IMG/VR virus record: IMGVR_UViG_3300036944_001324
Coordinates: 124,001-188,000 of that record
Strand: one strand, 5' to 3'
Length of the DNA: 64,000 bases
Shown here: one piece after another, positions 81 through 62,892 of the stretch
How the letters are laid out: each line of letters starts with the position of its first letter
Position numbering within the stretch: the stretch's first letter is position 1
The notes under the pieces: generated by a model
What the model saw: the letters and a program-made list of their open reading frames with translations, nothing else
The model's database searches: none
What the model was told of the DNA's origin: nothing
Position numbers and translations under genes: made by a program

Positions 81-127
81 ACGGCATAACAAGGAGAGTC
101 CCTTCATCGGGCTCTCCTTTTATGTTG
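81..127. terminator. CATA/TATG-framed hairpin
   Basis: ACGGCATAAC-AAGGAGAGTCC...GGGCTCTCCTT-TTATGTTG. Confidence 0.7.
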
Positions 128-152
128 CTCAACCTATTCCAAAGAGGAAGAT

Positions 153-881
153 ATGGATTTCAGTCAATTGCACCGGGACGCAGCAGCAGTGAAGAAAACT
201 CTGCTGATGACGCCTGGTGATAACAGCGTGTACACCAAGACGGGATGCAAGGTTTACTTCCCGCAGCGCTTCCTTGATCGCTCTATGGCGTTCGTAGGCA
301 GTGAGAACTTGGTCTGCGGTATTGTGGCTATCGTGTTGGAAACCGGCGAGTACGCAGTCTTGTCGGTGAACGCCATGGTTCCGATGGAGCCCGACACAAT
401 CGAGAAGGTTAACTACCTTGGTGTCGATTATGTGGAGTTTGGTTTTGAGCCCGGTGCTCGTGTCATCAAGACCCTTGATTTGGTCAAGAACGACATCTTG
501 GTTTACCGGATCAACAACGAACTTATCTCCAAAGGAAATGTTCCTTGGTACATGGAGTACGACGACATGGCTGCAGTGTTTGATACTGCGGCCAAACATG
601 CAGGCACCAACATCGCTGAAAACAGTGAGGTGACGGAACTCATCGTTTCATTGATCGCGCGTGACCAAGAAGATCGCACGGTTTACTACCGCTCGACTAT
701 CAACACGCCAGAAGAGATGAAAGCCAAGAAAGTAGCATGGATCGCCATGATGAGCGCTGCTTACTCAGCGACCAATACCCTGAACAAACTAGGCGGCAGC
801 TACTTCACTGAAGGTGCTTTGTCCGCTATGGTCTATCCGACTGAACGTGTGGAGAAGATCGAAGAGTTGATCCGAGCCTGA
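153..881 (+). CDS. Conserved phiKZ-like protein, probably the virion RNAP beta' C-terminal fragment (phiKZ gp176/SPN3US gp244-like)
   Basis: 242 aa, SD GAGGA. C-terminus ATNTLNKLGGSYFTEGALSAM resembles the beta' C-terminal region. Lies near the prohead protease as in related phages (recalled synteny). Confidence 0.5.
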   Translation: MDFSQLHRDAAAVKKTLLMTPGDNSVYTKTGCKVYFPQRFLDRSMAFVGSENLVCGIVAIVLETGEYAVLSVNAMVPMEPDTIEKVNYLGVDYVEFGFEPGARVIKTLDLVKNDILVYRINNELISKGNVPWYMEYDDMAAVFDTAAKHAGTNIAENSEVTELIVSLIARDQEDRTVYYRSTINTPEEMKAKKVAWIAMMSAAYSATNTLNKLGGSYFTEGALSAMVYPTERVEKIEELIRA

Positions 882-884
882 GTC

Positions 885-1154
885 ATGGAAGACGCGGCTT
901 TCGATCAGTTCACGTTCGTCATGTTGATCATGACGCTCAAAGAGATCGCTCACACTGAGATCTTTCGGACCAACCAAGAACGCTCTAAGCGTTTCGCCAC
1001 GAATTACCCGACGCTCATGGCGGGCGGTTACGTGTGTAGTTGGGGGGTTACCCTATGGTTGTTGTTTGACAACGCTCCAGCGGCCATTGCGGGCTTCCTA
1101 GCGGCATTCCTGTGGGAGGTTCTCATGACACCTACAGCTGGCCGTAAAAAGTAG
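885..1154 (+). CDS. Small membrane protein
   Basis: 89 aa with 2-3 hydrophobic segments and a basic C-terminus (GRKK). Confidence 0.55.
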   Translation: MEDAAFDQFTFVMLIMTLKEIAHTEIFRTNQERSKRFATNYPTLMAGGYVCSWGVTLWLLFDNAPAAIAGFLAAFLWEVLMTPTAGRKK

Positions 1155-1165
1155 ACATACTACAA

Positions 1166-1204
1166 GCATAAAAGCCAGCCGTAAAAAGCTGGCTTTTATG
1201 CTGT
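1166..1204. terminator. CATA/TATG-framed hairpin
   Basis: GCATAAAAGCCAGC-loop-GCTGGCTTTTATGC, perfect stem. Confidence 0.8.
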
Positions 1205-1224
1205 TTAGTAGGGTGAAGGTAACA

Positions 1225-1250
1225 TTTTTCAGCGATACATCATCGATGTG
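1225..1250 (+). promoter_or_regulatory. Putative phage early promoter
   Basis: TTTTTCAGCGATACATCATCGATGTG matches the repeated consensus TTTCRNNSAYAYATYATCNNTGKG. Confidence 0.7.
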
Positions 1251-1306
1251 TATTGGTACGTCTAAGCGTACAAGCCCTGGCTAGCAACCAGGGTTTTTAT
1301 GCCGTC
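1251..1306 (+). ncRNA. Candidate ~50-nt small RNA or attenuator
   Basis: Promoter motif directly followed by hairpin GTACG/CGTAC and terminator CCCTGG/CCAGGG-TTTTT-ATGCCGTC; no ORF. Confidence 0.4.
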
Positions 1307-1397
1307 TAAATGCAAACTTCTCACTAAACGGATTTTATAAAAACCGGACACCTAATTGCGTGTGTCCGGTATGTCGTTCAATCATCGAAAGAAAAAC

Positions 1398-1823
1398 ATG
1401 CAATACTTGAATCAACTCACTGGTCGTTCTTTCTCTTTGTCTTTGGTGGTTTGTGAGAAAAGAGGTAAAGGGGTAATTGCCTATCTTGTTCCAACACATC
1501 TCGTAGGTAATCCCGTTATTGGGGTTATGGATAGAACGCGCATGACGCCGAGCGACGGAAAACCCTGGTATCCAGTGTTCGAGGGTGACGACCTTATCTC
1601 GGCGCTCGCTGGACTGGAAACTTCTATTTCTGTCGTACTCTCACGGACACGAAACGGCGAGATAATTTCCGTAGAGAAGTTCGCAGCGATGACGTGGAAC
1701 ACAGCAGTGTCCACTATTCAACATAACCGACCCGTTCTGAGTGTTACAGCTATTCTTAAAATGGAAGACATCTCACAGCTCATTCCGCGAGATAAGGCCG
1801 ACCCGCCTTCCTGCGGTATCTAA
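1398..1823 (+). CDS. Hypothetical protein
   Basis: ORF; ATG at 1398 preferred over the upstream TTG. Confidence 0.6.
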   Translation: MQYLNQLTGRSFSLSLVVCEKRGKGVIAYLVPTHLVGNPVIGVMDRTRMTPSDGKPWYPVFEGDDLISALAGLETSISVVLSRTRNGEIISVEKFAAMTWNTAVSTIQHNRPVLSVTAILKMEDISQLIPRDKADPPSCGI

Positions 1824-1832
1824 GGGGTTATC

Positions 1833-2219
1833 ATGAAAGACTTTTTCACATCTGAAGTTTTGCACCCTACTGGGTTTGCCAAGATGCAGGACAAAGACGC
1901 CGTTCGTCACAAAATCGGATTGATCTTAGCCGGTGCAGATCACGCCTATTTGATCCTCGCTGACCATCCTCTTGGTCTCTACGATAAGGACAAACTTCAC
2001 GAACACCAAGAAAGCTTTCGCAAAGAAGTTTCTGCTATCGTGGTGCAAGCCAGTTACGTACTGGACAACTTAACCCAGTGGGGTGTTTGTCCTGAAGCAG
2101 ATAAGAACATGCTGGACTTCGTGATTGCAAAAGCATGGGGTAATCACCATGCGTTGGTGCGGTTGATGGATGAGGAATGTCATGTAGCAAAGTTATCGAA
2201 AGGTACTTTGAAGCATTAA
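1833..2219 (+). CDS. Hypothetical protein
   Basis: 128 aa ORF with SD AAGGGG. Confidence 0.65.
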   Translation: MKDFFTSEVLHPTGFAKMQDKDAVRHKIGLILAGADHAYLILADHPLGLYDKDKLHEHQESFRKEVSAIVVQASYVLDNLTQWGVCPEADKNMLDFVIAKAWGNHHALVRLMDEECHVAKLSKGTLKH

Positions 2220-2347
2220 AGGAAAGTCACTACAGGACGAAGACAGGAATTATGTGTACGTAATTCCCTGACACCATAAACCCCCTTAGTAGCTACAAGG
2301 CTACTAAGGGATCTTTATCGGGGTCTTTCTTTTCTTATCTTCGCCCT

Positions 2348-3097
2348 ATGAACAACATTCGTTTTACCTGCACCTCGCTGGCTAACACCGGCAAGAAAGG
2401 CATCTTGGTGCCTGATGCCGATGGTTACTACACACAAACCATCGGTGGCTTGTCCATCTTCAATTCGGCTGGTCATTTCTACGAAGCCAATCGTGCAGCG
2501 TTGTCTCTCTTTGAGAACTCGTCTGCGTTCATGCGACGTGTCAAACGCGGCGCCCTTCGTGCTGAAGTCGACCATCCCGAATGGAAGAAAGGCATGACTG
2601 AGGATGAGTACGCTGCACGGATGATGACCATCGACCCCCGCAACGAATGCGCCCACTTCTCCGAGATCTTCCTTGACACGAAGAACTTCAAGAATGCAGA
2701 TGGAACTCCCGTGGTTGCTATCATGGGTAAGTTCAAGCCTTCCGGCGTGCACGGCGAAATGCTGCAAAAGAAAGTGGACAATGGCAAAGAGAACGTTTGC
2801 TTCTCTATCCGAGCTTTCACCCAGGACACCTACCAACGTGGCGTACGTCATCGCACGTTGTGCGAAGTCATCACGTTCGACTACGTGAACGAACCTGGCA
2901 TCCACATCGCTGAGAAATTCAAGAGCCCGACGCTTGAGAGCTACGTGGACAAGACCTGGACCCGTGAAACCATCGAGAAGGCTTGCGATCGTCAAGTCCT
3001 GAACTTCGGTCGTGAGTCCGTCACCCTGAGCAAAGAACAGTTGTTCGAGAGCTTCGGTTGGAAAGAACAATCGATGCCTGGCTTTACCCGCTGGTAA
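2348..3097 (+). CDS. Prohead (head maturation) protease, phiKZ gp175-like
   Basis: Catalytic-His motif AEVDHP, catalytic-Ser motif CFSIR, ITFDYVNEPGI, and a C-terminal PTLES autocleavage-type site. Confidence 0.85.
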   Translation: MNNIRFTCTSLANTGKKGILVPDADGYYTQTIGGLSIFNSAGHFYEANRAALSLFENSSAFMRRVKRGALRAEVDHPEWKKGMTEDEYAARMMTIDPRNECAHFSEIFLDTKNFKNADGTPVVAIMGKFKPSGVHGEMLQKKVDNGKENVCFSIRAFTQDTYQRGVRHRTLCEVITFDYVNEPGIHIAEKFKSPTLESYVDKTWTRETIEKACDRQVLNFGRESVTLSKEQLFESFGWKEQSMPGFTRW

Positions 3098-3103
3098 TCC
3101 GGT

Positions 3104-3150
3104 AACAACATAAAAAGAGCCTTCCTTTACGGGAAGGCTCTTATGCCGTC
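3104..3150. terminator. CATA/TATG-framed hairpin
   Basis: AACATAAAAAGAGCCTTCC-loop-GGAAGGCTCTTATGCCGTC. Confidence 0.8.
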
Positions 3151-3162
3151 AGAGTTTATATA

Positions 3163-3400
3163 GACGGCATAAACGGCACGTCCGGATTCCCCCACCAGGA
3201 GTGCCGAACGTGCCTTGCTTCAATGAGGACAACATTGATGCTGTTTATGGGTGGGTCAAACAGAGGTGCTTCACAGCAATCCTAACCACCGTTCCGAAGA
3301 ACCGGAGATGCTTCCGTCAATCAACCTTCCCACTGAACTTGCAAAACAGCAGGGGATCAATCACATTATTTATCCCATTCCATCCAGTCTGAACCATCGT
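3163..3400 (-). ncRNA. Candidate structured ncRNA (~230 nt)
   Basis: No credible ORF. Minus strand shows a c(UUCG)g hairpin, several other stems and a terminal GGCACG/CGTGCC hairpin followed by TTTATGCCGTC. Confidence 0.4.
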
Positions 3401-3410
3401 ATCCTAAAAA

Positions 3411-3435
3411 AATTCAATCACACATCATTGATTGG
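3411..3435 (+). promoter_or_regulatory. Putative phage early promoter
   Basis: AATTCAATCACACATCATTGATTGG, near-consensus. Confidence 0.55.
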
Positions 3436-3492
3436 AGATGCATCCACCTCTGGATTGCAGCTTCGATCAACCTAACCTTTCTTTCAACCAAC

Positions 3493-3765
3493 ATGAAGAC
3501 CTTCGATTTTCTTGGTCACGCCTACGATGCTGACCGCGCTACTTTGTTGGTGCGCATGTCTGGGCCTGACATTATGATCAAGGTCGATGACATGGTACTC
3601 ACGAGTGCTAAGCTCGTAACTGACCACTTCAGTTTGCCCTGTGTGGTTCAGCATGAGAACAAGTACCACGCTTTGTCTTTGCCGCAGGACTTCAAAGCCT
3701 CCGGTGAAATCAAAGTGCGCTTGCTCTCGAAACCGACCCTGAAGCGATTCCGGGTTGGTGCGTAA
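3493..3765 (+). CDS. Hypothetical protein
   Basis: 90 aa ORF downstream of the promoter motif. Confidence 0.6.
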   Translation: MKTFDFLGHAYDADRATLLVRMSGPDIMIKVDDMVLTSAKLVTDHFSLPCVVQHENKYHALSLPQDFKASGEIKVRLLSKPTLKRFRVGA

Positions 3766-3966
3766 GGCATGGATTTGGCGGTTTGCCAGGAACTGCTGGC
3801 CGCGCCGGTGCCCGCGTGAGATTCGTCTCATAGCCGACGCCGCGCCGTTTGCAGGTCCGTTTTTGAAACCGTCTCCCCGCTGGCGTAGTTCTCCTCCCTC
3901 CCTCTCGGTTGCCAGCGGGGATCTTTTTTCTTTCTGTCTCTCAACTCTCTTTCAAGGAAAAGCAAC

Positions 3967-4362
3967 ATGTCCAAAGTCGACCTCGACGCGCAATACGTCA
4001 CCCCGATCTATGACCACCTGAAGGCCGGAAACACCGAAGAAGACCTGCACATCAAGACCGCACCCGAAGGCATCACCGGCGACTCCATCAAGCTGCACCA
4101 GACGCACGACATCAACTTCGTGGCCGGCGCCACCCGCGCCGTCACCCGCCTGGCCAAGGAAAACTTCACTGCCAACGACGGCCTGGAATCCGAAACGCAG
4201 ACCCTGGGCATGTCCGGCAAGAACAGCGTCACCGTGACCGCTGAACGCACTGGTGTTGTCAATGTGACCGTGGTCAACCGCGCGGCCGACGCCGGCGCAG
4301 GTGAACTCCGCAAGGCCACCAAGGCCTTCGCCGAGGCCATGAAAGAAGCCCAAGAAGCGTAA
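3967..4362 (+). CDS. Hypothetical protein, predicted highly expressed
   Basis: SD AAGGA. Strong C-ending codon bias like the sheath and chimallin genes. Terminator follows at 4386-4427. Confidence 0.85.
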   Translation: MSKVDLDAQYVTPIYDHLKAGNTEEDLHIKTAPEGITGDSIKLHQTHDINFVAGATRAVTRLAKENFTANDGLESETQTLGMSGKNSVTVTAERTGVVNVTVVNRAADAGAGELRKATKAFAEAMKEAQEA

Positions 4363-4454
4363 CCGCTTCCGGCTTTCCTGCAATCGCAATAAAAGAGAGG
4401 CCGCTCGGGCCTCTCTTTTTTATGCCCTCTTTCATTTTTGTTTCAAATAAAATC

Positions 4455-4964
4455 ATGGCACAAACTAAATACGAACAACTCGAGTTGCTCAGAAAACTGT
4501 CTCTGCGCATCCAGCGTGAGATCGTTGACATCGTCGGAGGGACCCAAAATCTCAAAATGATCAAAGACGTGATTGAAGGAACTCCGGTCGATCCGTCTGC
4601 AGCGGACGTTTTCGACAAGCTCACTGTCGCTCAGGTTTTCAAAGCCGGTCTTCACAACGATCTGGCTGTCTTCCTGCGACTGCAGACTTACCACCGGCGA
4701 GTGCCTGGCCTGCTTCGGGAGCTGGGGGGAGCTCTTGGTGAGAAGAAAACTGGCATGGACAACGAAGCCTGGCTGAAAGTTGTCATCAGTATTGCAGCGC
4801 AGGCAAGCGGAGATACTGACAAACCCACGGAATGGTCCATCCCGTGCTTGGAAGAATTGGTAGACAACCAATTAGTCCTTGAAGATCTGAACCATCTTCG
4901 AAGCCGTAACGTCAACAAGCTTTTCCACAAGCTGGCTTTGAACGTCGCGTGTCCGGCACCCTAA
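4455..4964 (+). CDS. Hypothetical protein
   Basis: ORF from ATG 4455; framed hairpin follows at 4980-5020. Confidence 0.7.
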   Translation: MAQTKYEQLELLRKLSLRIQREIVDIVGGTQNLKMIKDVIEGTPVDPSAADVFDKLTVAQVFKAGLHNDLAVFLRLQTYHRRVPGLLRELGGALGEKKTGMDNEAWLKVVISIAAQASGDTDKPTEWSIPCLEELVDNQLVLEDLNHLRSRNVNKLFHKLALNVACPAP

Positions 4965-5103
4965 TCCACGGAGGACACGACCATATAGGAGGACCCCGAA
5001 GGGTCCTCCTGCTATGCCGTTTCTATTTCTTTTTGGCGATATATGCTCGTCGGGATATGGAGTTCTATCCTGTCTTTTTCATCAACCTTTAAGGAGTATC
5101 CTC

Positions 5104-6309: not shown

Positions 6310-6316
6310 TGCTTTA

Positions 6317-6360
6317 ACGGCATAAAAAGAGGCTCCCGCAAGGGAGCCTCTTATGCTGTC
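6317..6360. terminator. Bidirectional CATA/TATG-framed hairpin between convergent genes
   Basis: ACGGCATAAAAAGAGGCTCCC-GCAA-GGGAGCCTCTTATGCTGTC. Confidence 0.85.
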
Positions 6361-6375
6361 TATTTCTTTTTTTGT

Positions 6376-14377: not shown

Positions 14378-14476
14378 GCGTTTTCTGGTGAGTAGTTGAG
14401 ATAGGGGTGGGCTGGCTTGTGCTGGCCCGCCTCTTGACCTTGTTGAATTCTTTTTCTTTTCTTTGAAAGCTCGAAC

Positions 14477-15346: not shown

Positions 15347-15602
15347 TCGACAAGGCGTCATAAACGCATCAGAAGCCCTCCAGAAGCCACTCAATAAGCC
15401 TTACCAAGGCCATGGGTGCTCTGGGGGGTTTTATGCCGTCTATGGAGTTTTAACGAAGAGTATCTTGTGAGCCAATCTCCATTGCAGGGACAGCCAGCGT
15501 AACCAGTCGTTGCCGTTCTTTTGGGAATTGAAAATTCCGGCAGGTATGTTGAATCCAAAACGCATATCTACCCTACAACTAACCTTTCGTTAAAAATCTG
15601 CT

Positions 15603-17839: not shown

Positions 17840-17883
17840 ACGGCATAAAGCCCTACCCAAAACGGGTAGGGCTTTTATGTTGT
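17840..17883. terminator. Bidirectional CATA/TATG-framed hairpin
   Basis: ACGGCATAAAGCCCTACCC-loop-GGGTAGGGCTTTTATGTTG between convergent genes. Confidence 0.85.
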
Positions 17884-22844: not shown

Positions 22845-22861
22845 CCAACACCGCATACAGA

Positions 22862-22893
22862 CCCTACCCAAGCCTTAGATGGTCTGGGCAGGG
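22862..22893. repeat. Dispersed hairpin repeat, copy A
   Basis: 29/32 identical to the reverse complement of 39540-39571. Confidence 0.8.
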
Positions 22894-22926
22894 TCTTATG
22901 TCGTCTACAAAGAAAAGGAATCAGTC

Positions 22927-24690: not shown

Positions 24691-24825
24691 CAACTATCAG
24701 CCCCTCCAAAAGAGGGCTGATTATGCCGTCTTTGTAGTTGCTTGTCTTTTTTATCTAAGAGAAGTAAACCATCTGTCTGAGACGCATGTGACGTCTTGTT
24801 TACAATCTGGATAAAACGGGGATCT

Positions 24826-28902: not shown

Positions 28903-28980
28903 GTGCTTCTAACAGCATAAAAAGAGAGCTTCCGCGAGGAAGCTCTCTTATGCCGTCTGTTTTTCTTTTTCTAGTCTAAC

Positions 28981-32344: not shown

Positions 32345-32568
32345 TGGCGTCGTAAAGGGCCTTAAAAGCCCTTTACAGCGTTGTTGTCGATAAAGACATA
32401 CATAGAGATCAAGAGGAAAGAGAACGCGTTAAAAGGCGTTTTCTCCTCTTGGGCTTTATGCTGTCTTGGTAGTTGGATAAGTCCGGTTGTGGTGGTTTTT
32501 ATTAGACACAGAGAATGGTTTGAGGGAAAGGGAGCAGTTATGCTTTCTGACCTTTTAAGGAGAACGTC

Positions 32569-33856: not shown

Positions 33857-33980
33857 GAGCTACAAAACAAGTAATCGGCATAAAGGGCTGCGCTCACGCA
33901 GCCCACCTATAACAATTTCAATTTACTAAAAAAGGGGAAGACAATGTTGTCTGTTTATACGTAGTTACAAGGAGTTGATC

Positions 33981-36529: not shown

Positions 36530-36597
36530 CCTCTATACAACCACCTCCACGATCCTTGACGGGTCTGGAGGTGGTTGTAGTTGATTCTTTTTCTTTT

Positions 36598-36993: not shown

Positions 36994-37281
36994 TTAGTGG
37001 CGTGGTGGTTTTTGTCCATTAATGAATAAAGACCATAGCGCTACTAATGGTATGCAGAAGAAACTCAATCGCGATTCGATCTCGTATCGATGGTACGGCC
37101 TCACGCCCTTCGTCCACAGTTGCTGCCACCCTTAACTCGCACACACTTCTTTTTTCCTTTCTTGATGTGGTGTCGTAGAACAAGTGTGGCGTCAAACGGT
37201 CATGGTCCCGAGGTGAGAGTTTGTTTTGTGCCTGCCTCTGAACGCCAGCCCGACTTGTTCGAGGCTGGCGTTTATGCCGTC
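36994..37281 (+). ncRNA. Candidate structured 3' RNA / ncRNA
   Basis: About 290 nt without a credible ORF; ATTAGTGGCG/CGCTACTAAT helix; ends in a hairpin plus TTTATGCCGTC. Confidence 0.3.
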
Positions 37282-39524: not shown

Positions 39525-39539
39525 CAAGACAGCATATAG

Positions 39540-39571
39540 CCCTACCCGGACCATCTAAGGCTCGGGTAGGG
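39540..39571. repeat. Dispersed hairpin repeat, copy B (within a bidirectional terminator)
   Basis: Inverted copy of 22862-22893, framed by GACAGCATA...TATGGCGTC. Confidence 0.8.
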
Positions 39572-39582
39572 CTTGTATGGCG

Positions 39583-40677
39583 TCAGGAAGAACTAGCAAT
39601 CATCTCGATGGCATCAAGCATCTCAAGAATCACGGGAGCGTCTGTTTTCATCTGGGTTGTAATGACTTGTCGCATGTTGGAATAGTCGATCATGCGGATC
39701 ATGTACTGCAAGTTTGATTTGTCGTATTCCTTCAAACGGGAAGGACTCAAAGCGGCCATCGCTGCGACGACCTTAATGCGTGCTACGACTTCAGCCCACG
39801 CGTATTGACGTGTTGGTGCCATGGCCGGAAGTTGCATGGCTTCTGCTGCGTTACTGGCAGTCACTGTCGGAATGTTGCACAGCATGTCGTGCAGGCTCAG
39901 GCCCGATGTCTGCAAATGCTCGATAGAGTGGTGCAATACCTTATCCGTGATCATCGAGTGATCACCTAACGCGAATGGATTTCTGCGCGATGGTTGTTTG
40001 AGAGGGTTCTTTGCGATGTGTGCAATCATCCGGTTGAGCAAAGCTACGTCCAGATGAGAGGGTATGGCATTTGCCAAGACATACGCATGCACAAACATAG
40101 GTGTCGTTTTTGGTGTTTGGCCACGTTGCAGTAGAGCGCGCTGCTCAATCAGAAAACAACGCCACATGATCGCCATCATGGTGATATTCACAGAGATCAC
40201 CGCGTAACCGCGTTCGCCACTATAAGCGACGCCGTTAGGAATGTGCATATCCAGATCAGTCTTGCAGTGATCAAGTATCTTGACAGGGGTTGCGTTCTTC
40301 CAATCTGCAGCTATCGCGTAGACGTCGAAGGGTTCGCTGTTGCCAACGATGATCTCTTTGACGCCGTCACCATAGAAGACACCATCGTGCAAAACACCTT
40401 GATGGATTGAGTTGGTCAGTTTCAACCCCATCGCCATGTAAGGCGCGCCAGTGTCCACAAGTTCGTAGTAACGCTCAAGAGGTGCATCAAGGTTCACACG
40501 CATGCTGTTGAGCATGCGCACTAACAAGTGGGTAGATCGAGTACCGATAGTTCTGGTATGGTAGTACGACAAGGCTTGCTGAAGGTTTCTGCTCAAACCA
40601 GAACGCGCTTGTGACCAGGCAGGTGAAATCACAACGCCGCGTTCTGAACTAGGACTTTTGTTGAAGAGGGTTTGCAT
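39583..40677 (-). CDS. Conserved virion protein, phiKZ gp52-like
   Basis: ATG 40677 (MQTLF); minus-strand gene between the DNA polymerase and chimallin, as in relatives. Confidence 0.65.
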   Translation of the reverse strand: MQTLFNKSPSSERGVVISPAWSQARSGLSRNLQQALSYYHTRTIGTRSTHLLVRMLNSMRVNLDAPLERYYELVDTGAPYMAMGLKLTNSIHQGVLHDGVFYGDGVKEIIVGNSEPFDVYAIAADWKNATPVKILDHCKTDLDMHIPNGVAYSGERGYAVISVNITMMAIMWRCFLIEQRALLQRGQTPKTTPMFVHAYVLANAIPSHLDVALLNRMIAHIAKNPLKQPSRRNPFALGDHSMITDKVLHHSIEHLQTSGLSLHDMLCNIPTVTASNAAEAMQLPAMAPTRQYAWAEVVARIKVVAAMAALSPSRLKEYDKSNLQYMIRMIDYSNMRQVITTQMKTDAPVILEMLDAIEMIASSS

Positions 40678-43129: not shown

Positions 43130-43318
43130 GCAGTTGCTACATGGGTAGCGTAAGTTATCCATGTTTCACAAGCCTTGCATGAAAGAGTAATCACACACCA
43201 CACTCAACCTACTTCTTTGACACCGCTTTAAAAGAGCTTTAAGTCATTGAGGTAGGAAGAGTGCGTGTGGTTATTTCTTTTATGCTGTCAGTTCATAAAT
43301 ACAAGGAGTGCAGAGAAG

Positions 43319-46039: not shown

Positions 46040-46157
46040 TCCAGCTCAAAAGTAGAAGATCCAACTGCACTCGCTTATTCAGCCTTCTTGGTTGAGTAGG
46101 TGGCTGCTGGTTGGATCTTCTTTTTATGTTCTTTCTTTTTCGGAGAGGTTATTTTAC

Positions 46158-50977: not shown

Positions 50978-50996
50978 CTGAAACAACGTTAGCAAT

Positions 50997-51040
50997 CGGC
51001 ATAGAGGAGAGGCCTTCGTGGCCTCTCCTTTTATGGTGTT
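50997..51040. terminator. CATA/TATG-framed hairpin
   Basis: CGGCATAGAGGAGAGGCC-loop-GGCCTCTCCTTTTATGGTG. Confidence 0.8.
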
Positions 51041-51076: not shown

Positions 51077-51109
51077 ATATGTACCGTACCACCCAAAAGG
51101 AAAAGACCA

Positions 51110-54470: not shown

Positions 54471-54500
54471 ACACCCCATTCAAGTAAAGGAAAAATCAAA

Positions 54501-55652: not shown

Positions 55653-55671
55653 CACTGAAGTCTGAGCTGTA

Positions 55672-55718
55672 AACGGCATAGAACCCTACCCTGTCAAACG
55701 GGTAGGGTTCTTAGCTGC
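55672..55718. terminator. Bidirectional hairpin
   Basis: AACGGCATAGAACCCTACCC-loop-GGGTAGGGTTC between convergent genes. Confidence 0.8.
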
Positions 55719-55728
55719 TTCTTTATTT

Positions 55729-56076
55729 TTATCGCTTGATCTTCACCTTCATCTGCGTACGGTGCGTGTTGTAAATACGCCGGATGTACTGAGGGTCTAC
55801 CATGACAACCATGGAGATGTCCGAGTTGACATCGCTGGGTGAGATCATGTCGTTTACACGAAGAGTGATCCACTTGAGGTAATCAGGGACACCCAATTCG
55901 TTGAGTAGTCCATAAAAGTCACCCTTGTAACGCAGCGCCTGGATGGGCGTGATTGTTACGGTGGTGAGATTCGATTGTTCTTTGATGATCTTGAGGTGTT
56001 CTTCGAGAACTTTGCGAAACATGGGTTCGAAATAACCCGCTGAATCAGTTACGTTCAATACGTCTGTCAGTGCCAT
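55729..56076 (-). CDS. Conserved small protein (possible LysM-like fold)
   Basis: 115 aa with Y.GDFYGLL and W...RVN...P motifs; SD AAGGA. Confidence 0.7.
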   Translation of the reverse strand: MALTDVLNVTDSAGYFEPMFRKVLEEHLKIIKEQSNLTTVTITPIQALRYKGDFYGLLNELGVPDYLKWITLRVNDMISPSDVNSDISMVVMVDPQYIRRIYNTHRTQMKVKIKR

Positions 56077-56093
56077 AAAAATAGTCCTTAAAA

Positions 56094-56119
56094 ACTTTCA
56101 GCGATACATTATCAATGGG
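56094..56119 (+). promoter_or_regulatory. Putative phage early promoter
   Basis: ACTTTCAGCGATACATTATCAATGGG. Confidence 0.75.
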
Positions 56120-56205
56120 TGTTAGATGGTCAAACCATTGTCTTGGCCGGACAATGAAAGCGTTTTATTAGTGCGGTGAGAACAAAGCAAAGGAAGAGAT
56201 GAAGC

Positions 56206-58335: not shown

Positions 58336-58384
58336 CTCCATGGTGGGGTCACTCCCCACCATGGTAAAGAATAAAAGGAAGTAC

Positions 58385-60412
58385 ATGACAGTGTTGCAAA
58401 AATACTCAGCCAGCAAGATGCTGCGTCGCACGACGCAAGAACTCATGGATCGGTTGGCTGGGAATTTCATCTTGGTGTTCGATGACGGGAAGGAAATCGA
58501 AACCAATGACCTGGAAACCGTCTACAGCAGTTTCTTCTGGGACATCATTCGGGTTCATCCGTTCACACCTCTGACATCAGACATGCATGTGTCGTCCGTT
58601 CTCAAAGGCGGACTGGCTAACTCTGGCACTCACCTGAAGTTGCTCGAGCGCATTTCGTTCAGCGTGATTGATGCGGCTGCCGCTGGGAACATCCCGCTGG
58701 ACATGGATCGTCTGGGCAAGATGATCTACGAAGGTGCGAACAACCTCTACAACTACGCTTGTGTGGGTATGGAAAGTGATGTTCCTTCTACGGACATCCT
58801 GGACTACGTGGAGGTGTTGAACCATCCGGCCATCAAGCCCATCATGGATCAGATGGAAGCTACGGAAGATTCCATCGCTAAGGCGTACGCTTCTATCAGT
58901 GCGGTCATCATGAATGACCCCACGCTGGCCAATAACGCGTTGTGCATCAGTGCTCGTTCTGGAATGGTCCGTGTGAACCAGTTGCTCCAATGCTTGGTGA
59001 CTCGCGGATACGTGACGGATATCGACTCACTGATCTTCCCAGAGCCTGCTATGGGATCGTTCGCAGCGGGTTACAAGGACTTCTACAGTCTGTTCATCGA
59101 CAGTCGCACCGCCTCTAAGAGCTTGTTCTTCTCGGCCAAGCTGTTGCGCGATACGGAATACAGCAGCCGCAAGCTGCAGATTCTGTGCATGTCGTTGGAA
59201 ACACTGCATCCTGGTGATTGTGGTTCCACGAAGTACATGCCATGGTTAGTACGGGCTGAGCAAGTGGATGAGAACGGTAAGGTCGTTCGTGAAAGTGACT
59301 TGAAGGCATTTGCCGGTAAGTACTTCCTGGACGAAGAAACCAACTCCATCAAAGAGCTCAAACCTGACGATACCAAGTATCTGGGCAAGATGCTGCAGTT
59401 CCGCTCCACGCTGGCAGGTTGCAACCACCCTGATACCCACGGCACATGCATGACGTGTTTTGGTGCCATGGGTCGTATCATCCCTGACAAGACCAATATC
59501 GGTCACTTGCTGGCCGCCGCCTTGATGCAGGTGCTCTCGCAGAGCATCTTGTCTGTCAAGCACATCGACAGCTCGTCTTCGTCGAACAAGATCATCTTGA
59601 ACGACTACTACACCAACTGGTTGGCAGTGAGTCCCGATGGTAAAGGATACATGTTGTCCAAGAACCTTCGTGGCAAGACTGTCAAGTTCGTGATCGCACC
59701 TGATGAAGTTCCTAACCTGCCTAGCATCAACGCTACGCTGGAACTGGACACCCTGGTGATCGATCAGATCTCTGAAATCGAGACCATGACCATGGTCGTG
59801 ACGGACGGTATCGAAACCATCCCTCAACCGCTGGTTTTGATGAGCGACAAGCGTAAGGCGTCTTTCACGCACCAAGCGCTGGAATTCATCAAGACGCGCG
59901 GCTGGACGAATGATGATCGGGGCAACTACGTGATTGATTTCACTGGCTGGCCTATCAACCAAGTCATGATGGAATTGCCGCAGCGCCACTTCAACACAGC
60001 TGACCACGCTGAAGAAATCACCAAGCTGATCCAAGGCTCAGGTGATGACAAGAACAAGCGCCGTCAAGAAGGCTCTGTGTTCGCTTACTTCCATGAACTC
60101 TTCGAGCTTGTGAATAAGCGCCTGCAGGTTCCTGCGGTGATCCTGGAGCACATCATCTACGCTGCGAGTAATCGCAATGCAGACGAAGATGACTACCGCC
60201 TGCCGCGTGGCCGCCATACCCGGCAGATGGGTCTGACGAACATGACAGTGCCAGAGCGCTCCATGGGAGCTGGTATTGGGTTTGAGCGTCACATCAAGGC
60301 GATCTTCTCACCCAGTATCTTTGATCCAGAAAAGCGCGCCGATCACGTCTTTGACGTGGTTGCGTTGCCCAAAGAAACAGTGGCTGATCGTAACAGCCGC
60401 GGCTTGGCGTAA
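58385..60412 (+). CDS. Non-virion RNAP beta' C-terminal subunit (phiKZ gp74-like)
   Basis: Bridge-helix-like SR.A.KSL...TEY..RKL, DCG, Zn site RS...C...C..CFG, and trigger-loop-like SQSILSVKH; ATG 58385. Confidence 0.9.
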   Translation: MTVLQKYSASKMLRRTTQELMDRLAGNFILVFDDGKEIETNDLETVYSSFFWDIIRVHPFTPLTSDMHVSSVLKGGLANSGTHLKLLERISFSVIDAAAAGNIPLDMDRLGKMIYEGANNLYNYACVGMESDVPSTDILDYVEVLNHPAIKPIMDQMEATEDSIAKAYASISAVIMNDPTLANNALCISARSGMVRVNQLLQCLVTRGYVTDIDSLIFPEPAMGSFAAGYKDFYSLFIDSRTASKSLFFSAKLLRDTEYSSRKLQILCMSLETLHPGDCGSTKYMPWLVRAEQVDENGKVVRESDLKAFAGKYFLDEETNSIKELKPDDTKYLGKMLQFRSTLAGCNHPDTHGTCMTCFGAMGRIIPDKTNIGHLLAAALMQVLSQSILSVKHIDSSSSSNKIILNDYYTNWLAVSPDGKGYMLSKNLRGKTVKFVIAPDEVPNLPSINATLELDTLVIDQISEIETMTMVVTDGIETIPQPLVLMSDKRKASFTHQALEFIKTRGWTNDDRGNYVIDFTGWPINQVMMELPQRHFNTADHAEEITKLIQGSGDDKNKRRQEGSVFAYFHELFELVNKRLQVPAVILEHIIYAASNRNADEDDYRLPRGRHTRQMGLTNMTVPERSMGAGIGFERHIKAIFSPSIFDPEKRADHVFDVVALPKETVADRNSRGLA

Positions 60413-60454
60413 ACAGCATAAAGCAAGGGAGCCTGTCCGCTCCCTTGCTTATGT
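60412..60454. terminator. CATA/TATG-framed hairpin
   Basis: ACAGCATAAAGCAAGGGAGC-loop-GCTCCCTTGCTTATG. Confidence 0.8.
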
Positions 60455-60484
60455 TTTCTTTTTCTTTGAAGGGAAGTTAATTTC

Positions 60485-60916
60485 ATGACTACGGCAAAAC
60501 AATTGTCCCAAACTCATCGTGATGCCTGCGCGCTGGTGTTCATTGCAAGTACTTACGCGGGTAAGACCGACAGCAAAATGAAGTTGTCTGAAGTCGCCAA
60601 GTGGTTTGAGCTGACGGATGACATTCGCTGGCGCAAAGAGTTGAAAAAGGAACGTACCCATCCTGTTCATCTCAACCATGTTCAGATGGATGTGGATGCT
60701 CGAATCGCTGCCAATGCGGTACTGTCTTTCATCGCCATGGTTGAATCCGGCATGACAGTCAGCAAGGCTTTGAAAGAAGCAAAAATTTGGGTGCTGGAAA
60801 GTCGTGTGCGTACCCGGGAAGACCGTTACGCTCGTGTGGAGAAAGCACTGCGCTCTATTTACGAATTCAAATCGCATCACGACGATGCGTTGAAGGAAGT
60901 CATCGAAGCTTCCTGA
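60485..60916 (+). CDS. Hypothetical protein
   Basis: 143 aa; SD AAGGGA. Confidence 0.75.
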   Translation: MTTAKQLSQTHRDACALVFIASTYAGKTDSKMKLSEVAKWFELTDDIRWRKELKKERTHPVHLNHVQMDVDARIAANAVLSFIAMVESGMTVSKALKEAKIWVLESRVRTREDRYARVEKALRSIYEFKSHHDDALKEVIEAS

Positions 60917-61024
60917 CAGAATTTGGGCAATGGTGCCCAAAGACCCGCCGTTGTGCGGTTATTTAAACCCCGTCCTAGACGGGGAGTCCCCAGGCCAATT
61001 GAGGCCGAAACTTGAAAGAGCATT

Positions 61025-62551
61025 ATGCTGCGTGTTATTCAACATTACCAAGACAAGATCCTCCAAGACCTGAAAAACGGCACTTACGGCACCAACGAAA
61101 ACGACTTCCAAGTCATTGCAGTTGGTGGTCCGTCTCTGGGAATTCCCAGCAAGCAGTTGCGTAGCATCTTCCTGGTTCTGTCGAAGATGGATGCCAATGG
61201 TGAGGTACTCATCAACGACGAATTCGATGCTGAGGCTTTTGATCTGCTGCTGATGTTGGTTGGTTTTGATCGACAACAGCGCAAGGCGTACAAATACGTC
61301 GGTGACAAGGACAACTACAAGACCCGCTTGACTACGAGTCGCTGGATGGTTGGAAAAGAAATGGTCATCGAAGTGGGCGTCTGCAACGAACTCTACGATG
61401 ATGGAGATGTGCTTCAGAGCAAATCGACGCCGCAATTCGCGCAAACCCGTGTCGATAACAAGCGTCGTCGTTTTGATCTCGCGATTGACAACCCACTGCA
61501 CGTGGTGAATGCTATCAACGAAGCTCATGAAAATGGTGAACGCGTTGTGTTGACCATCAACCCTGTTGTCTGCGGTCATCAGCTGAAAGTTAAAACGTTT
61601 GTCATTGCTCTGGTTGAGCTGCTGAACGTCACGATGTACAGCAAAACAGCAGGCTTGCGTGAACGCTACCTTCTGAATCCAGCCAGTGCGTTGCCCGACA
61701 TGCACGCGCGTTACTTCACCATTGACGCTTTGGTCAACGCGATTACATCCGACATGAAAAACACGTCACGGTTCATTTTTGACTTCACCGACGCTAAAGA
61801 AGCTAAGGTGTTTCACAAACGCACCGGCGTGAATATGTACCTGTACTCGGTGATGGCTAAGCCTGATCCGTTCCGTTACCAGATCCCGTCGAACGTCATG
61901 GCTACCATCATTGCCAGCCATGTCTCGTCTCCTCGTCCGGGTACTGAGCCTGGTCATGGTTTCACGCTGGTGAAGTCTCTCTTCGACATTAACCAGTTAG
62001 CAAAGTACTTCTACATCAAGGACAATGACACTTCCACCAAGAAAGTAACCGGTAGTCTTCACGACTACTACGTGAACAACGGCGGGAGCGATTTGCTTCT
62101 TACGTGGTCGTTGTCTGTTGGTGTGGTTGACGACCACACTACGTGGACACTCGCACTGTACGACCTCAGTAACGGTCTTCAGGTTATTCGATGCGATGCA
62201 AAGTGTGTCACGGGTAAACCGGATAGTGATGCTCGTGTCATCCATCCCATCACTACTGACGACGACTTGGGTTACAACTTGATCGATGTCGAGATCTTTA
62301 TTCGGCGTGTGGGTGTGCTCCTGAAAAACGGTCGCACAGTTATCGTCCGACGTAAAGATAAGACTGCGTTTACGCTCCACCCGTACGCTCTGGAAGCATT
62401 GCCTTACGCTGGTGATAAGGGCGAAGTGACTGATGAACGCATCAAAGCCCAAACGTCCGCATGTTTCACTAACGTTATCGAAGTGGAGCTCAAGCAGAAA
62501 CCTACCGATGAAAAACGCGGTTACCAGTTCTTGGCTGAACCGCAACGTTAA
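61025..62551 (+). CDS. Hypothetical protein
   Basis: 508 aa ORF. Confidence 0.8.
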   Translation: MLRVIQHYQDKILQDLKNGTYGTNENDFQVIAVGGPSLGIPSKQLRSIFLVLSKMDANGEVLINDEFDAEAFDLLLMLVGFDRQQRKAYKYVGDKDNYKTRLTTSRWMVGKEMVIEVGVCNELYDDGDVLQSKSTPQFAQTRVDNKRRRFDLAIDNPLHVVNAINEAHENGERVVLTINPVVCGHQLKVKTFVIALVELLNVTMYSKTAGLRERYLLNPASALPDMHARYFTIDALVNAITSDMKNTSRFIFDFTDAKEAKVFHKRTGVNMYLYSVMAKPDPFRYQIPSNVMATIIASHVSSPRPGTEPGHGFTLVKSLFDINQLAKYFYIKDNDTSTKKVTGSLHDYYVNNGGSDLLLTWSLSVGVVDDHTTWTLALYDLSNGLQVIRCDAKCVTGKPDSDARVIHPITTDDDLGYNLIDVEIFIRRVGVLLKNGRTVIVRRKDKTAFTLHPYALEALPYAGDKGEVTDERIKAQTSACFTNVIEVELKQKPTDEKRGYQFLAEPQR

Positions 62552-62562
62552 AGGAAACCATC

Positions 62563-62829
62563 ATGAAAAACTCGATCGACATCGTCGCCTTCATCAAGGC
62601 GATCTTCGGTGAGAAGTTCACCGGTCACATCACTGTGCTGGTCGACAAGTACGGCACTGAGATCAAGACGGATAAGTACAAGTCTGACGTGTTTCGCGTC
62701 ATTCTGCCTCACCGTGAAGTAGTCGTGTTAGTACAGGGTAAACCGATCCTCACACTGACTAGCGGTCACAACGATCTCACGTTCCACAAGAGCGTATGCG
62801 TTGCCGTTACCGCTGTGACTACTGAGTAA
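62563..62829 (+). CDS. Hypothetical protein, paralogue of 22521..22844
   Basis: SD AAGGA; FGEKFTGHITV. Confidence 0.75.
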   Translation: MKNSIDIVAFIKAIFGEKFTGHITVLVDKYGTEIKTDKYKSDVFRVILPHREVVVLVQGKPILTLTSGHNDLTFHKSVCVAVTAVTTE

Positions 62830-62892
62830 TTACCGTAACCACCATAAGCAAGGAGGGAAATCCCCTCCTTGCTCTTATGTCTGAAAGATAAA

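What the first reader, a model, noticed from the sequence alone, without database searches (positions are those of the whole stretch)
81..62882. Window-wide family of hairpins framed by conserved (G)ACRGCATA...TATGCYGT(C) arms: a candidate phage-RNAP-specific termination or processing code
Seen: about 20 intergenic hairpins have unrelated stems but share flanks. Exact TATGCCGTC occurs at 1298, 3142, 15432, 24722, 28949 and 37273; TATGCTGT at 1197, 6352, 32457 and 43281; the reverse complement (A)CGGCATA at 81, 3164, 6317, 17840, 33877, 50997 and 55673. Many lack a real U-tract. Conversely, strong hairpin+U-tract elements without the arms sit inside apparent operons (14403-14464 between sheath and tube, 36534-36597, 46055-46140, 3874-3935). 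Known: phiKZ-type phages use their own multisubunit RNAPs, and TATG is the phiKZ late-promoter core. Inference: the sequence arm, not the U-tract, may specify termination, cleavage or re-initiation, or may bind a phage protein. I cannot check whether this has already been described in relatives.
Basis: partly seen in the sequence, partly recalled or inferred. Interest (0 to 1): 0.7.

Follow-up and report, generated by a model that had tools for sequence, protein, structure and literature searches.

The report
Jumbo-phage terminators with a conserved TATGCYGT box
The hairpins framed by ACRGCATA...TATGCYGT are real and are this jumbo phage's transcription terminators, often working in both directions; the same hairpin-plus-TTATKYYGT signal has already been mapped at RNA 3' ends in its relatives phiKZ and 201phi2-1, so it is a new example of a known signal rather than a new code.

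Summary
TATGCYGT occurs 20 times in the window against 2.6 expected. It occurs 72 times in the 271.6-kb genome, 66 of them in the 10% that is intergenic. TTTTATG, TTTATGC and TATGCCG are the most intergenic-enriched 7-mers. About half of strong hairpins between co-directional genes, and two thirds between convergent genes, carry the box right after the stem. Only 2-3% of coding hairpins do.

The genome is phiKZ-like: 76 shared proteins, including homologs of the non-virion RNA polymerase (nvRNAP) subunits gp68 and gp123.

The element matches the published phiKZ terminator motif (hairpin + YTTATKYYGT, Putzeys 2024) and 201phi2-1 "motif A". I mapped published phiKZ 3' ends onto its genome. RNA ends fall inside TTAT|K|YY, never past Y6. 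Published start sites never fall on the box.

The 5' "arm" is the same box on the opposite strand. The two arms sit out of register and avoid exact complementarity, so the elements are bidirectional terminators, not an extended RNA stem.

201phi2-1 terminators with this box stop host polymerase in uninfected cells, so "phage-RNAP-specific" is not supported. Why ATGYYGT is conserved is still open. The final GT lies beyond the released RNA, which suggests a DNA-level pause or release signal.

The parts
81..128 (.). Bidirectional terminator between two + genes. Hairpin 89-120. The - strand box TATGCCGT lies at 81-88. The + strand box TATGTTGC (1 mismatch) lies at 121-128.
1165..1204 (+). Terminator. 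The long hairpin AGCATAAAAGCCAGC...GCTGGCTTTTATGCT includes the box TATGCTGT at 1197-1204. It starts 10 nt after the stop of the upstream + gene.
1275..1306 (+). Terminator. Hairpin 1275-1296, then TTTTTATGCCGTC (box at 1298-1306).
1340..1377 (+). Terminator-like hairpin (CCGGACAC...GTGTCCGG) followed by TATGTCGT at 1370-1377.
2271..2310 (-). Hairpin 2283-2310 with a box only on the - strand (TATGGTGT, 1 mismatch, 2271-2278). It lies antisense to the flanking + genes.
3105..3150 (.). Bidirectional terminator. Hairpin 3115-3142. The + box TATGCCGTC lies at 3142-3150 and the - box TATGTTGT at 3105-3112.
3163..3212 (-). Second, - strand terminator facing the previous one. An imperfect hairpin at 3172-3212 is followed on the - strand by TATGCCGTC (3163-3171).
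4391..4428 (+). Terminator. Hairpin 4391-4419, then TTTTATGCCCT (1 mismatch, 4421-4428).
4987..5020 (+). Terminator. Hairpin 4987-5010, then GCTATGCCGT (box at 5013-5020).
6317..6359 (.). Bidirectional terminator between convergent genes. Hairpin 6327-6352. The - box TATGCCGT lies at 6317-6324 and the + box TATGCTGT at 6352-6359. A near-identical copy lies at genome 26389-26431.
15395..15440 (+). Weak or imperfect hairpin, then TTTTATGCCGTC (15432-15440), 85 nt after the ORF that follows the sheath gene.
17840..17883 (.). Bidirectional terminator between convergent genes. Hairpin 17847-17875 (CCCTACCC stem). The - box TATGCCGT lies at 17840-17847 and the + box TATGTTGT at 17876-17883.
22850..22904 (.). 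Long-loop hairpin 22858-22896 (CCCTACCC...GGGCAGGG). The + box TATGTCGT lies at 22897-22904 and the - box TATGCGGT (1 mismatch) at 22850-22857.
24698..24730 (+). Terminator. Hairpin 24698-24721, then TATGCCGTC (24722-24730). There is no T-run.
28912..28957 (.). Bidirectional terminator between two + genes. Hairpin 28922-28949. The - box TATGCTGT lies at 28912-28919 and the + box TATGCCGTC at 28949-28957. A promoter-like motif follows at 28992.
32410..32464 (+). Imperfect long hairpin 32410-32452, then CTTTATGCTGT (box at 32457-32464).
33875..33904 (-). Hairpin 33885-33904 with a box only on the - strand (TATGCCGA, 1 mismatch, 33875-33882).
37243..37281 (+). Terminator. Hairpin 37243-37271, then TTTATGCCGTC (box at 37273-37281). 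My rough gene call places a doubtful 53-aa ORF over it.
39529..39583 (.). Bidirectional terminator between convergent genes. Long-loop hairpin 39537-39575, of the same stem-loop family as 22858. The - box TATGCTGT lies at 39529-39536 and the + box TATGGCGT (1 mismatch) at 39576-39583.
43281..43288 (+). TATGCTGT preceded by CTTT but without a convincing hairpin (-3.8 kcal/mol). It is a doubtful member.
46055..46132 (+). Very long hairpin (-45 kcal/mol), then TTTTTATGTTCT (1 mismatch, 46125-46132).
50996..51039 (.). Hairpin 51005-51030 with one-mismatch boxes on both strands: - TATGCCGA at 50996-51003 and + TATGGTGT at 51032-51039. A promoter-like motif follows at 51061, upstream of the gp68 homolog.
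55673..55711 (-). Terminator of the - strand gene 55729-56076. Hairpin 55680-55711, then TATGCCGT on the - strand (55673-55680). The convergent + gene has no + box.
60413..60457 (.). Hairpin 60421-60450 between + genes. The - box TATGCTGT lies at 60413-60420 and the + box TATGTTTT (1 mismatch) at 60450-60457.
62839..62883 (.). Hairpin 62847-62873 with degenerate (2-mismatch) boxes on both sides.
14403..14440 (+). Hairpin without a box between the sheath gene and the next ORF. No T-run follows directly. Probably not a terminator of this family.
3874..3935 (+). Hairpin without a box, followed by TCTTTTTTCTTTC. This is one of the few classical hairpin + U-tract elements.
36534..36597 (+). Strong hairpin without an adjacent box. 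CTTTTATGTACG lies about 20 nt downstream.

Best explanation
The elements are the phage's factor-independent-type transcription terminators, of the kind already described for phiKZ-like (chimalli-) viruses. Each is a stable hairpin, then a short T-run, then the conserved box (T)TATGYYGT; in this phage the box is mostly TATGCYGTC.

The 5' 'arm' ACRGCATA is the same box read on the opposite strand. Elements with both arms are therefore two terminators sharing one hairpin, one for each direction of transcription. In this phage that holds even between co-directional genes, where the antisense copy would stop antisense or read-in transcription.

Shown:
- The family is real, intergenic, tied to hairpins, and oriented after gene ends.
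- It matches the box found at mapped RNA 3' ends in phiKZ and 201phi2-1.
- In those phages the RNA ends inside UUAU|G|YY and the last GT is not in the released RNA.
- Start sites do not coincide with the box.
- Such terminators work with host RNAP.

Inferred:
- The same holds in this phage, for which no RNA data exist.
- The box compensates for the weak U-tract by acting on the polymerase at the DNA level or in the active site. It offers two successive pyrimidine|G steps (UAU|G and GYY|G) at the right distance from the stem, which would act as pause and release points.
For: Enrichment and intergenic location.

Tie to hairpins and orientation: the box is present at 38/76 sense flanks between co-directional genes, 19/28 between convergent genes, 0/8 between divergent genes and 3/290 coding flanks. 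The upstream gene is on the same strand for 50 of 66 intergenic boxes, with the box typically 30-50 nt after the stop.

Published motif: phiKZ hairpin + YTTATKYYGT from 61 terminators mapped by ONT-cappable-seq (PMC10914365). 201phi2-1 motif A (n=59) resembles it (PMC11512511).

Same architecture and frequencies when I ran one pipeline on phiKZ, Ralstonia phage RP12 and this genome.

RNA 3' ends: 118 published phiKZ TTS were mapped and 43 fall at a box. End positions within the box, numbered T0 T1 A2 T3 K4 Y5 Y6 G7 T8, are 1, 3, 4, 5 and 6 (6, 8, 2, 10 and 9 cases), and none lies at G7 or T8 or later. Three tested 201phi2-1 terminators have their TTS at position 6 of perfect boxes.

The genome is phiKZ-like: 76 shared proteins, including homologs of PHIKZ068 (window 51110-52708) and PHIKZ123.

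The arms behave as independent per-strand boxes. Their register differs in 27 of 28 two-armed hairpins. Their variable YY positions match less often than chance: 2/31 against 8.2 expected (p=0.003); RP12 2/27 against 6.8; phiKZ 2/22 against 4.5. Antisense boxes anchored only on TAT still keep G7 in 68% and T8 in 55% of cases.
Against: There are no RNA ends for this phage. The only public runs holding it are wastewater libraries that behave as DNA contigs.

Mapped 3' ends in relatives could be trimmed by exonucleases that stall a few nt after a hairpin, so 'ends inside the box' does not prove release there. ONT-cappable-seq resolves ends only to 1-2 nt.

The 201phi2-1 authors found that terminators with co-occurring motifs (elongated stems) were stronger. 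They favour an RNA-level role for the extra pairing, which is in tension with my reading of the arms as independent.

Eleven hairpins between co-directional genes carry only the antisense box, and no antisense transcription is documented here.

My gene calls are home-made, so a few contexts may be misassigned.
Confidence: 0.85

Rival explanations
1. The TATG of the box is a promoter start site for the non-virion RNA polymerase, as in phiKZ late promoters (TATG with +1 at G). The elements would then be coupled terminator-promoter units where polymerase re-initiates.
For: The box contains an almost invariant TATG (T 100%, A 100%, T 100%, G 97%). This is identical to the phiKZ late-promoter core, which the beta-like subunit GP123 reads on the non-template strand. 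This genome has a GP123 homolog with 11 of 16 pocket residues identical. 31 boxes have a co-directional gene downstream.
Against: None of 59 published phiKZ TSS lies within 2 nt of a box; promoters sit 20-50 nt further downstream. 19 boxes face the 3' end of a convergent gene, and 16 more run antisense to both flanking genes. No box flanks any of the 8 hairpin sides in divergent regions. These regions hold other TATG contexts without YYGT. Nearly every box is tied to a hairpin, whereas the well-studied P119L promoter has none. A separate promoter-like motif follows many boxes.
Confidence: 0.05
2. The elements act mainly after transcription, as RNA 3'-end stabilisers or processing sites. The 5' arm would pair with the 3' box to give a fully paired 3' end that resists exonucleases, or a specific RNase would cut in the box.
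For: Mapped 3' ends cannot tell termination from trimming. When both arms are present they can pair if 1-3 nt bulges are allowed. Stronger termination or insulation with elongated stems was reported for 201phi2-1. In this genome 38 hairpins without a box sit close to the next start codon inside operons, so RNA-level hairpin functions clearly exist here.
Against: G7 and T8 are conserved (75-100%) yet lie beyond every mapped RNA end, so they cannot act in the mature RNA. The arms are out of register and avoid exact complementarity at YY/RR. About half of the sense boxes have no 5' arm at all. Reporter assays in uninfected cells show a block to downstream expression.
Confidence: 0.07
3. The palindromic arms are a double-stranded DNA site for a phage protein (regulator, nucleoid or packaging factor), or remnants of a mobile REP/MITE-like repeat. 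They would be unrelated to transcription ends.
For: There are more than 70 copies, a palindromic layout, and some recurring stems and a duplicated element.
Against: The spacing between the two arms varies with each stem (about 25-70 bp) and the stems are mostly unrelated, so no fixed dimer site or repeat unit exists. There is a strong bias to sit just after stop codons, with the box on the transcribed side. The motif is conserved across phages with very different G+C content and stems.
Confidence: 0.03

Closest known systems
phiKZ conserved terminator motif, 5'-BCCYCCCCHWWDGGGRRGGBYTTATKYYGT-3' (Putzeys et al. 2024, PMC10914365)
   Same: A GC-rich hairpin is followed by a short T-run and TATKYYGT. 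Location is intergenic, after gene ends. Bidirectional pairs occur between convergent genes. The fraction of intergenic hairpins carrying the box is similar (49% against 53%).
   Different: In phiKZ the stem itself is conserved (CCCTCCC/GGGAGGG tops the intergenic words). Here stems are diverse and the box is the conserved part. Here K is almost always G and YY is mostly CC or CT, while phiKZ prefers TT or TC. Here the antisense copy is a full box even between co-directional genes (G7 68% against 22% in phiKZ).
201phi2-1 terminator motifs A and B (PMC11512511)
   Same: Motif A is reported to resemble the phiKZ motif. Co-occurring motifs A+B elongate the hairpin, which fits a box plus its reverse-complement arm. 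Perfect TTATGYYGT boxes lie at three of the tested terminators.
   Different: I could not see the logos, because figures and supplements are not held. Equating motif B with the 5' arm is therefore my inference.
Classical bacterial intrinsic terminator (GC hairpin + U-tract)
   Same: Hairpin position, distance from the stop codon, function with host RNAP in reporter assays, and A-tract/U-tract symmetry in bidirectional examples.
   Different: The U-tract is short and interrupted. 31 of 59 boxes have a T-run of 2 or fewer. Only 6 of 76 hairpins between co-directional genes have 4 or more Ts within 10 nt. A specific sequence, ATGYYGT, is conserved instead.
phiKZ late promoter core TATG, with +1 at G (Yakunina 2015, PMC4666361; PMC12809450)
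   Same: The identical four bases are nearly invariant. The phage has a homolog of the subunit that reads them.
   Different: The box is tied to an upstream hairpin and followed by YYGT. It often faces convergent genes and is not a mapped start site in phiKZ.
Sequence-specific pause and termination signals: the T7 RNAP class II signal and the bacterial elemental pause consensus G-10 Y-1 G+1 (from my own knowledge, not tested here)
   Same: The concept of a short DNA-encoded word at or just beyond the RNA 3' end that halts the polymerase. Mapped ends before G (UAU|G, YY|G) fit a Y-1/G+1 step.
   Different: No sequence similarity to the T7 signal. A hairpin is always present here. The pause behaviour of the phage polymerases at this box has not been measured.

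Membership tests
phiKZ-type (chimallivirus) conserved terminator | Stable GC-rich stem-loop immediately upstream of the box | tested here: met
   Hairpins were found without using the motif. Those with a sense box have a median energy of -19 kcal/mol. Nearly all 72 exact boxes are preceded by a hairpin.
phiKZ-type (chimallivirus) conserved terminator | 3' box YTTATKYYGT directly after the stem | tested here: met
   Position frequencies: T 100, A 100, T 100, G 97, Y 97, Y 98, G 93, T 83%. The three preceding positions are 61-71% T. The box starts -1 to +3 nt from the stem end.
phiKZ-type (chimallivirus) conserved terminator | Lies after gene ends, oriented with the upstream gene; bidirectional between convergent genes | tested here: met
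   66 of 72 boxes are intergenic. 50 of 66 have the upstream gene on the same strand. 19 of 28 flanks between convergent genes carry the box and 0 of 8 between divergent genes.
phiKZ-type (chimallivirus) conserved terminator | RNA 3' ends map at the box during infection | not testable with these tools
   No RNA data exist for this phage. In relatives the feature is met: phiKZ has 43 TTS at boxes, and 201phi2-1 has 3 tested terminators at boxes.
phiKZ-type (chimallivirus) conserved terminator | Genome of a phiKZ-like phage that encodes its own multisubunit RNAPs | tested here: met
   76 phiKZ proteins have homologs, largely syntenic, including PHIKZ068 (nvRNAP sigma-like subunit; window 51110-52708) and PHIKZ123.
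phiKZ-type (chimallivirus) conserved terminator | Conserved stem sequence CCYCCCC...GGGRRGG, as in the phiKZ consensus | tested here: not met
   Stems here are diverse. This stem conservation looks specific to phiKZ, because RP12 also lacks it. I therefore treat it as a lineage trait, not a defining one.
Classical intrinsic terminator | Uninterrupted U-tract of about 4-8 residues right after the stem | tested here: not met
   The T-run ending at the T of TATG is 2 or fewer in 31/59 boxes and 4 or more in 21/59.
phiKZ late promoter (TATG, +1 = G) | Primary transcripts start at the G of the TATG | tested here: not met
   Tested on the relative phiKZ only: 0 of 59 published TSS lie within 2 nt of a terminator box. 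This could not be tested in this phage.
phiKZ late promoter (TATG, +1 = G) | Occurs upstream of genes, independent of hairpins | tested here: not met
   The 8-mer is almost never found without a hairpin. It flanks none of the 8 hairpin sides in divergent regions, and 35 of 66 copies point at the 3' end of a gene on the opposite strand.
REP/MITE-like dispersed repeat | Copies share one repeat sequence over their whole length | tested here: not met
   Only the 8-9 nt arms are shared. Stems and loops differ, apart from small sub-families.

The most novel reading that the evidence does not exclude
The box is not an RNA signal but a DNA word read by the elongating phage polymerase. When the active site reaches UAU|G, the non-template TATG would be caught by the same beta-lobe pocket of the gp123-like subunit that recognises TATG at late promoters. 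The following YY|GT would give a second pyrimidine|G pause. Together these would hold the enzyme at the right distance from the hairpin, so that termination needs no U-tract. One four-base word would then mean 'start' without a hairpin and 'stop' after one. The systematic avoidance of perfectly complementary arms would be part of the design of two back-to-back terminators.
Probability: 0.15. Interest if true: 0.75.

Novelty: new member of a known kind. Interest (0 to 1): 0.3.

Why it matters
For annotation, the box plus hairpin gives a cheap and specific way to mark transcription-unit ends in this uncultured jumbo phage and its relatives. I find the same signal in Ralstonia phage RP12. A crude word count also shows it in Burkholderia FLC9, Klebsiella Eowyn, Erwinia pEa_SNUABM_54 and 201phi2-1, but not in Ralstonia RSL2.

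For mechanism, the reason a specific ATGYYGT follows the hairpin in phages that use their own multisubunit polymerases is still unexplained in the literature. Three observations narrow the options and turn the question into a simple in vitro experiment:
- The last two conserved bases lie beyond the mapped RNA ends.
- The two arms of bidirectional elements do not co-vary for pairing.
- The core equals the late-promoter word.

As a discovery in its own right, however, the family is already described.

Tried and rejected
RNA evidence for this phage. The best 'RNA' runs are wastewater libraries. Laid on window 401-6400, they give long flat contigs typical of DNA and no pile-ups of molecule ends. 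The only breaks, at 6316/6361, come from the duplicated terminator, which confuses the assembly graph.

Close relatives for site-by-site conservation. Megablast against phage records found nothing. A protein-seeded scan of IMG/VR found no relative. The closest records are only about 41% identical in the tail sheath, so I compared motif statistics instead of aligned sites.

Literature. Ceyssens 2014 is not held. The supplements of the journal versions of the two ONT-cappable-seq papers are not held. The bioRxiv supplement of the phiKZ paper is held and I used it. I read TTS T001-T118 of 133 and TSS P008-P066 of 149, not the full tables.

Extended-stem hypothesis. I expected compensatory changes between the arms and found the opposite. 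In sense RNA the two variable positions give 20 Watson-Crick pairs, 10 G.U pairs and 12 A.C mismatches, with no directional preference.

The idea that P119L, the model late promoter, hides a hairpin. It does not.

I sent no protein-complex or structure job, because none would bear on the question.

Full report
WHAT IS THERE. TATGCCGTC occurs 7 times against 0.29 expected, and TATGCYGT 20 times against 2.63. In the whole genome there are 72 TATGCYGT sites. 66 of them lie in the roughly 10% of the sequence between my gene calls. A motif-blind comparison of intergenic and coding 7-mers puts TTTTATG, TTTATGC, AGCATAA/TTATGCT and TATGCCG at the top, with 30- to 55-fold enrichment.

I then located hairpins by thermodynamics alone. 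There are 94 intergenic and 145 coding hairpins at -9 kcal/mol or stronger. Printing their flanks shows the family at once: RRCATA(aaag)-stem-loop-stem-(cttt)TATGYYGT. The box TATGYYGT, with at most one mismatch, is present as follows:
- 38 of 76 sense-side flanks between co-directional genes.
- 31 of 76 antisense-side flanks between co-directional genes.
- 19 of 28 flanks between convergent genes.
- 0 of 8 flanks between divergent genes.
- 3 of 290 flanks of coding hairpins.
- 1.9% of random positions.

Two of the four 'armless' hairpins are truly armless (14403 and 3874). 46055-46124 is followed by a one-mismatch box, and 36534-36597 has TTTTATGT about 20 nt downstream.

WHAT PHAGE THIS IS. 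No near-identical record is visible. The tail sheath is about 41% identical to those of Burkholderia phage FLC9 and Ralstonia phages RP12 and RP31. 76 of my phiKZ ORFs have homologs here, largely in the same order. They include PHIKZ068, the sigma-like subunit of the non-virion RNA polymerase (nvRNAP; window 51110-52708), and PHIKZ123, its beta-like subunit (genome 67839-69446). It is therefore a phiKZ-like jumbo phage with its own polymerase.

WHAT THE ELEMENT IS. The literature already holds the answer for relatives. Putzeys et al. mapped transcript 3' ends of phiKZ by ONT-cappable-seq. [quoted passage not shown] The 201phi2-1 study finds a motif A (n=59) that 'strongly resembles' it. It also finds a motif B that co-occurs with A in 21 terminators and elongates the hairpin (PMC11512511).

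I ran the same pipeline on the full phiKZ and RP12 genomes. RP12's top intergenic words are again TTTTATG, TTATGCC and TTTATGC. The share of intergenic hairpins with the box is 49% (phiKZ), 46% (RP12) and 53% (this phage) between co-directional genes. It is 67%, 76% and 68% between convergent genes, against 2-4% for coding hairpins.

A crude count of TTATGYYGT against the same word read backwards gave these figures:
- This genome: 59 vs 15.
- 201phi2-1: 41 vs 12.
- phiKZ: 35 vs 15.
- RP12: 35 vs 14.
- Klebsiella phage Eowyn: 34 vs 18.
- Erwinia pEa_SNUABM_54: 29 vs 11.
- FLC9: 19 vs 5.
- Bacillus phage AgentSmith: 11 vs 5.
- Ralstonia RSL2: 11 vs 11.

The signal is widespread in the group but not universal.

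WHERE RNA ENDS AND STARTS FALL, IN RELATIVES. The bioRxiv supplement of the phiKZ paper lists coordinates. I mapped 118 of the 133 published 3' ends on the phiKZ genome, and 43 lie at a TTATKYYGT with at most one mismatch. The last RNA base is T1 (6 cases), T3 (8), K4 (2), Y5 (10) or Y6 (9), with a few ends just upstream.

The three 201phi2-1 terminators with TTS at 84,756, 132,419 and 229,201 sit on perfect boxes that start at 84750, 132413 and 229195. Their ends are therefore again at Y6.

Of 59 published phiKZ start sites (P008-P066), none lies within 2 nt of the G of a box. Twelve lie 10-119 nt downstream of one, nine of them at 20-49 nt. The model late promoter P119L has no hairpin. The box marks ends, not starts.

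THE TWO ARMS. The 5' arm is the box on the other strand. Three results argue that the two arms are independent per-strand signals rather than the two halves of a selected RNA helix.
- Register. In 27 of 28 two-armed hairpins the arms sit at different distances from the perfect stem, because each strand has its own T-run length.
- Variable positions. The YY positions are identical on the two strands, as perfect pairing would require, in only 2 of 31 cases against 8.2 expected by permutation (p=0.003). RP12 gives 2/27 against 6.8 (p=0.019) and phiKZ 2/22 against 4.5 (p=0.11). In sense RNA this yields both G.U pairs and A.C mismatches, with no preference.
- Completeness of antisense boxes. When flanks are anchored only on TAT, antisense boxes between co-directional genes still show G7 in 68% and T8 in 55% of cases, close to sense boxes at 75% and 75%. 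Those two positions correspond to the outermost 'AC' of the 5' arm. The RNA partner of that 'AC' is never made in terminated transcripts.

In phiKZ the antisense flank between co-directional genes is not a full box (G7 22%). Frequent fully bidirectional terminators inside co-directional gene arrays are therefore a trait of this phage and, to a lesser degree, of RP12. The avoidance of exact complementarity is unexplained. Avoiding long perfect palindromes in DNA is one possibility.

HOW IT PROBABLY WORKS. Shown: hairpin plus box marks 3' ends in two relatives, and such elements block read-through in uninfected host cells. Four 201phi2-1 terminators outperformed lambda T0, and three of those four carry perfect boxes. 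This is intrinsic-type termination that does not need a phage polymerase or phage factor.

Inferred: the box makes up for the poor U-tract. 31 of 59 boxes have a T-run of 2 or fewer, and only 6 of 76 hairpins between co-directional genes have four or more Ts within 10 nt. G7 and T8 are conserved but lie past the released RNA, so at least that part must act as DNA or in the active site. The two preferred end points precede a G (UAU|G and YY|G). This is the pyrimidine(-1)/G(+1) step known as the elemental pause signature of bacterial RNAP; that comparison rests on my own knowledge and was not tested.

A more speculative link also exists. TATG is exactly the word that phiKZ GP123 binds on the non-template strand at late promoters. 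11 of the 16 pocket residues are identical in this phage's homolog. However, the authors note that the pocket is incomplete in the transcribing complex.

TWO CLASSES OF HAIRPIN. Between co-directional genes, hairpins with a sense box have a median energy of -19.0 kcal/mol. They lie a median of 94 nt from the next start and are followed by a promoter-like motif in 9 of 38 cases. Hairpins without a box have a median of -14.6 kcal/mol, lie 40 nt from the next start and have such a motif in 2 of 38 cases. Most of them (34 of 38) also lack a U-tract. These look like intra-operon RNA structures rather than a rival class of terminators.

VERDICT. It is not supported on polymerase specificity or re-initiation, and cleavage and protein binding were not tested. 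The signal was published for phiKZ and 201phi2-1 in 2023-2024. This phage is a new, particularly clean and unusually symmetric example. The open and testable part is why ATGYYGT, and especially its untranscribed GT, is conserved.

Noticed in passing
window 1235, 3420, 21492, 28992, 41072, 51061, 56104 (16-mers; + strand): A second intergenic motif, roughly tttttcAGCgATAYATCATCGtTGTG. My pattern matches 21 intergenic sites (two are overlapping registers of one site) and 3 coding sites genome-wide. All but one lie on the + strand, 45-307 nt upstream of a + gene. Many sit 30-45 nt downstream of a terminator box. The layout resembles phiKZ early promoters, which lie about 40-50 nt after terminator boxes (P012, P017, P028). 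It is probably one promoter class of this phage.
   Followed up: partly
window 22858-22896 and 39537-39575; also genome 16187-16222: Three terminator hairpins share not only the CCCTACCC/GGGTAGGG stem but also a conserved 16-nt loop (GGACCATCTAAGGCTC or its complement). This sub-family might have an extra function, such as a binding site.
   Followed up: no
window 6317-6359 and genome 26389-26431: The two sites hold near-identical copies of one bidirectional terminator. Wastewater contigs break or branch exactly here, with loose ends that read the flank of the other copy. The repeat therefore confuses metagenome assemblies.
   Followed up: partly
genome-wide; in the window e.g. 3105/3142, 6317/6352, 28912/28949: In two-armed elements one strand usually has TATGCCGT and the other TATGCTGT. 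Identical YY on both strands is rarer than chance in this phage, RP12 and phiKZ (6 of 80 in total against about 19.5 expected). This is unexplained.
   Followed up: yes
window 5021-5035, 6360-6375, 28958-28975, 60458-60470: A pyrimidine-rich tract (CTATTTCTTTTT or CTGTTTTTCTTTTTC) follows many boxes directly. Position +9 is C or T, and +10 is T in 70% of cases. The tract may belong to the terminator or to the upstream part of the next promoter.
   Followed up: no
window 51110-60412: The window carries an nvRNAP gene cluster. Window 51110-52708 is a homolog of PHIKZ068 (sigma-like subunit). Windows 52842-54470 and 54501-55652 are homologs of PHIKZ069 and PHIKZ070. Two large ORFs, 56206-58335 and 58385-60412, match the phiKZ ORFs at 63275-64459 and 66626-68659.
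   Followed up: partly
window 401-6400: Wastewater runs hold strain variants of this phage at about 96% identity. One example is a 9.2-kb contig with 243 differences over 6 kb. Several listed indels fall in hairpin loops or flanks (1255-1294, 4403-4407, 4971-4976), and none is listed inside a box. The table was truncated, so this is only anecdotal.
   Followed up: no
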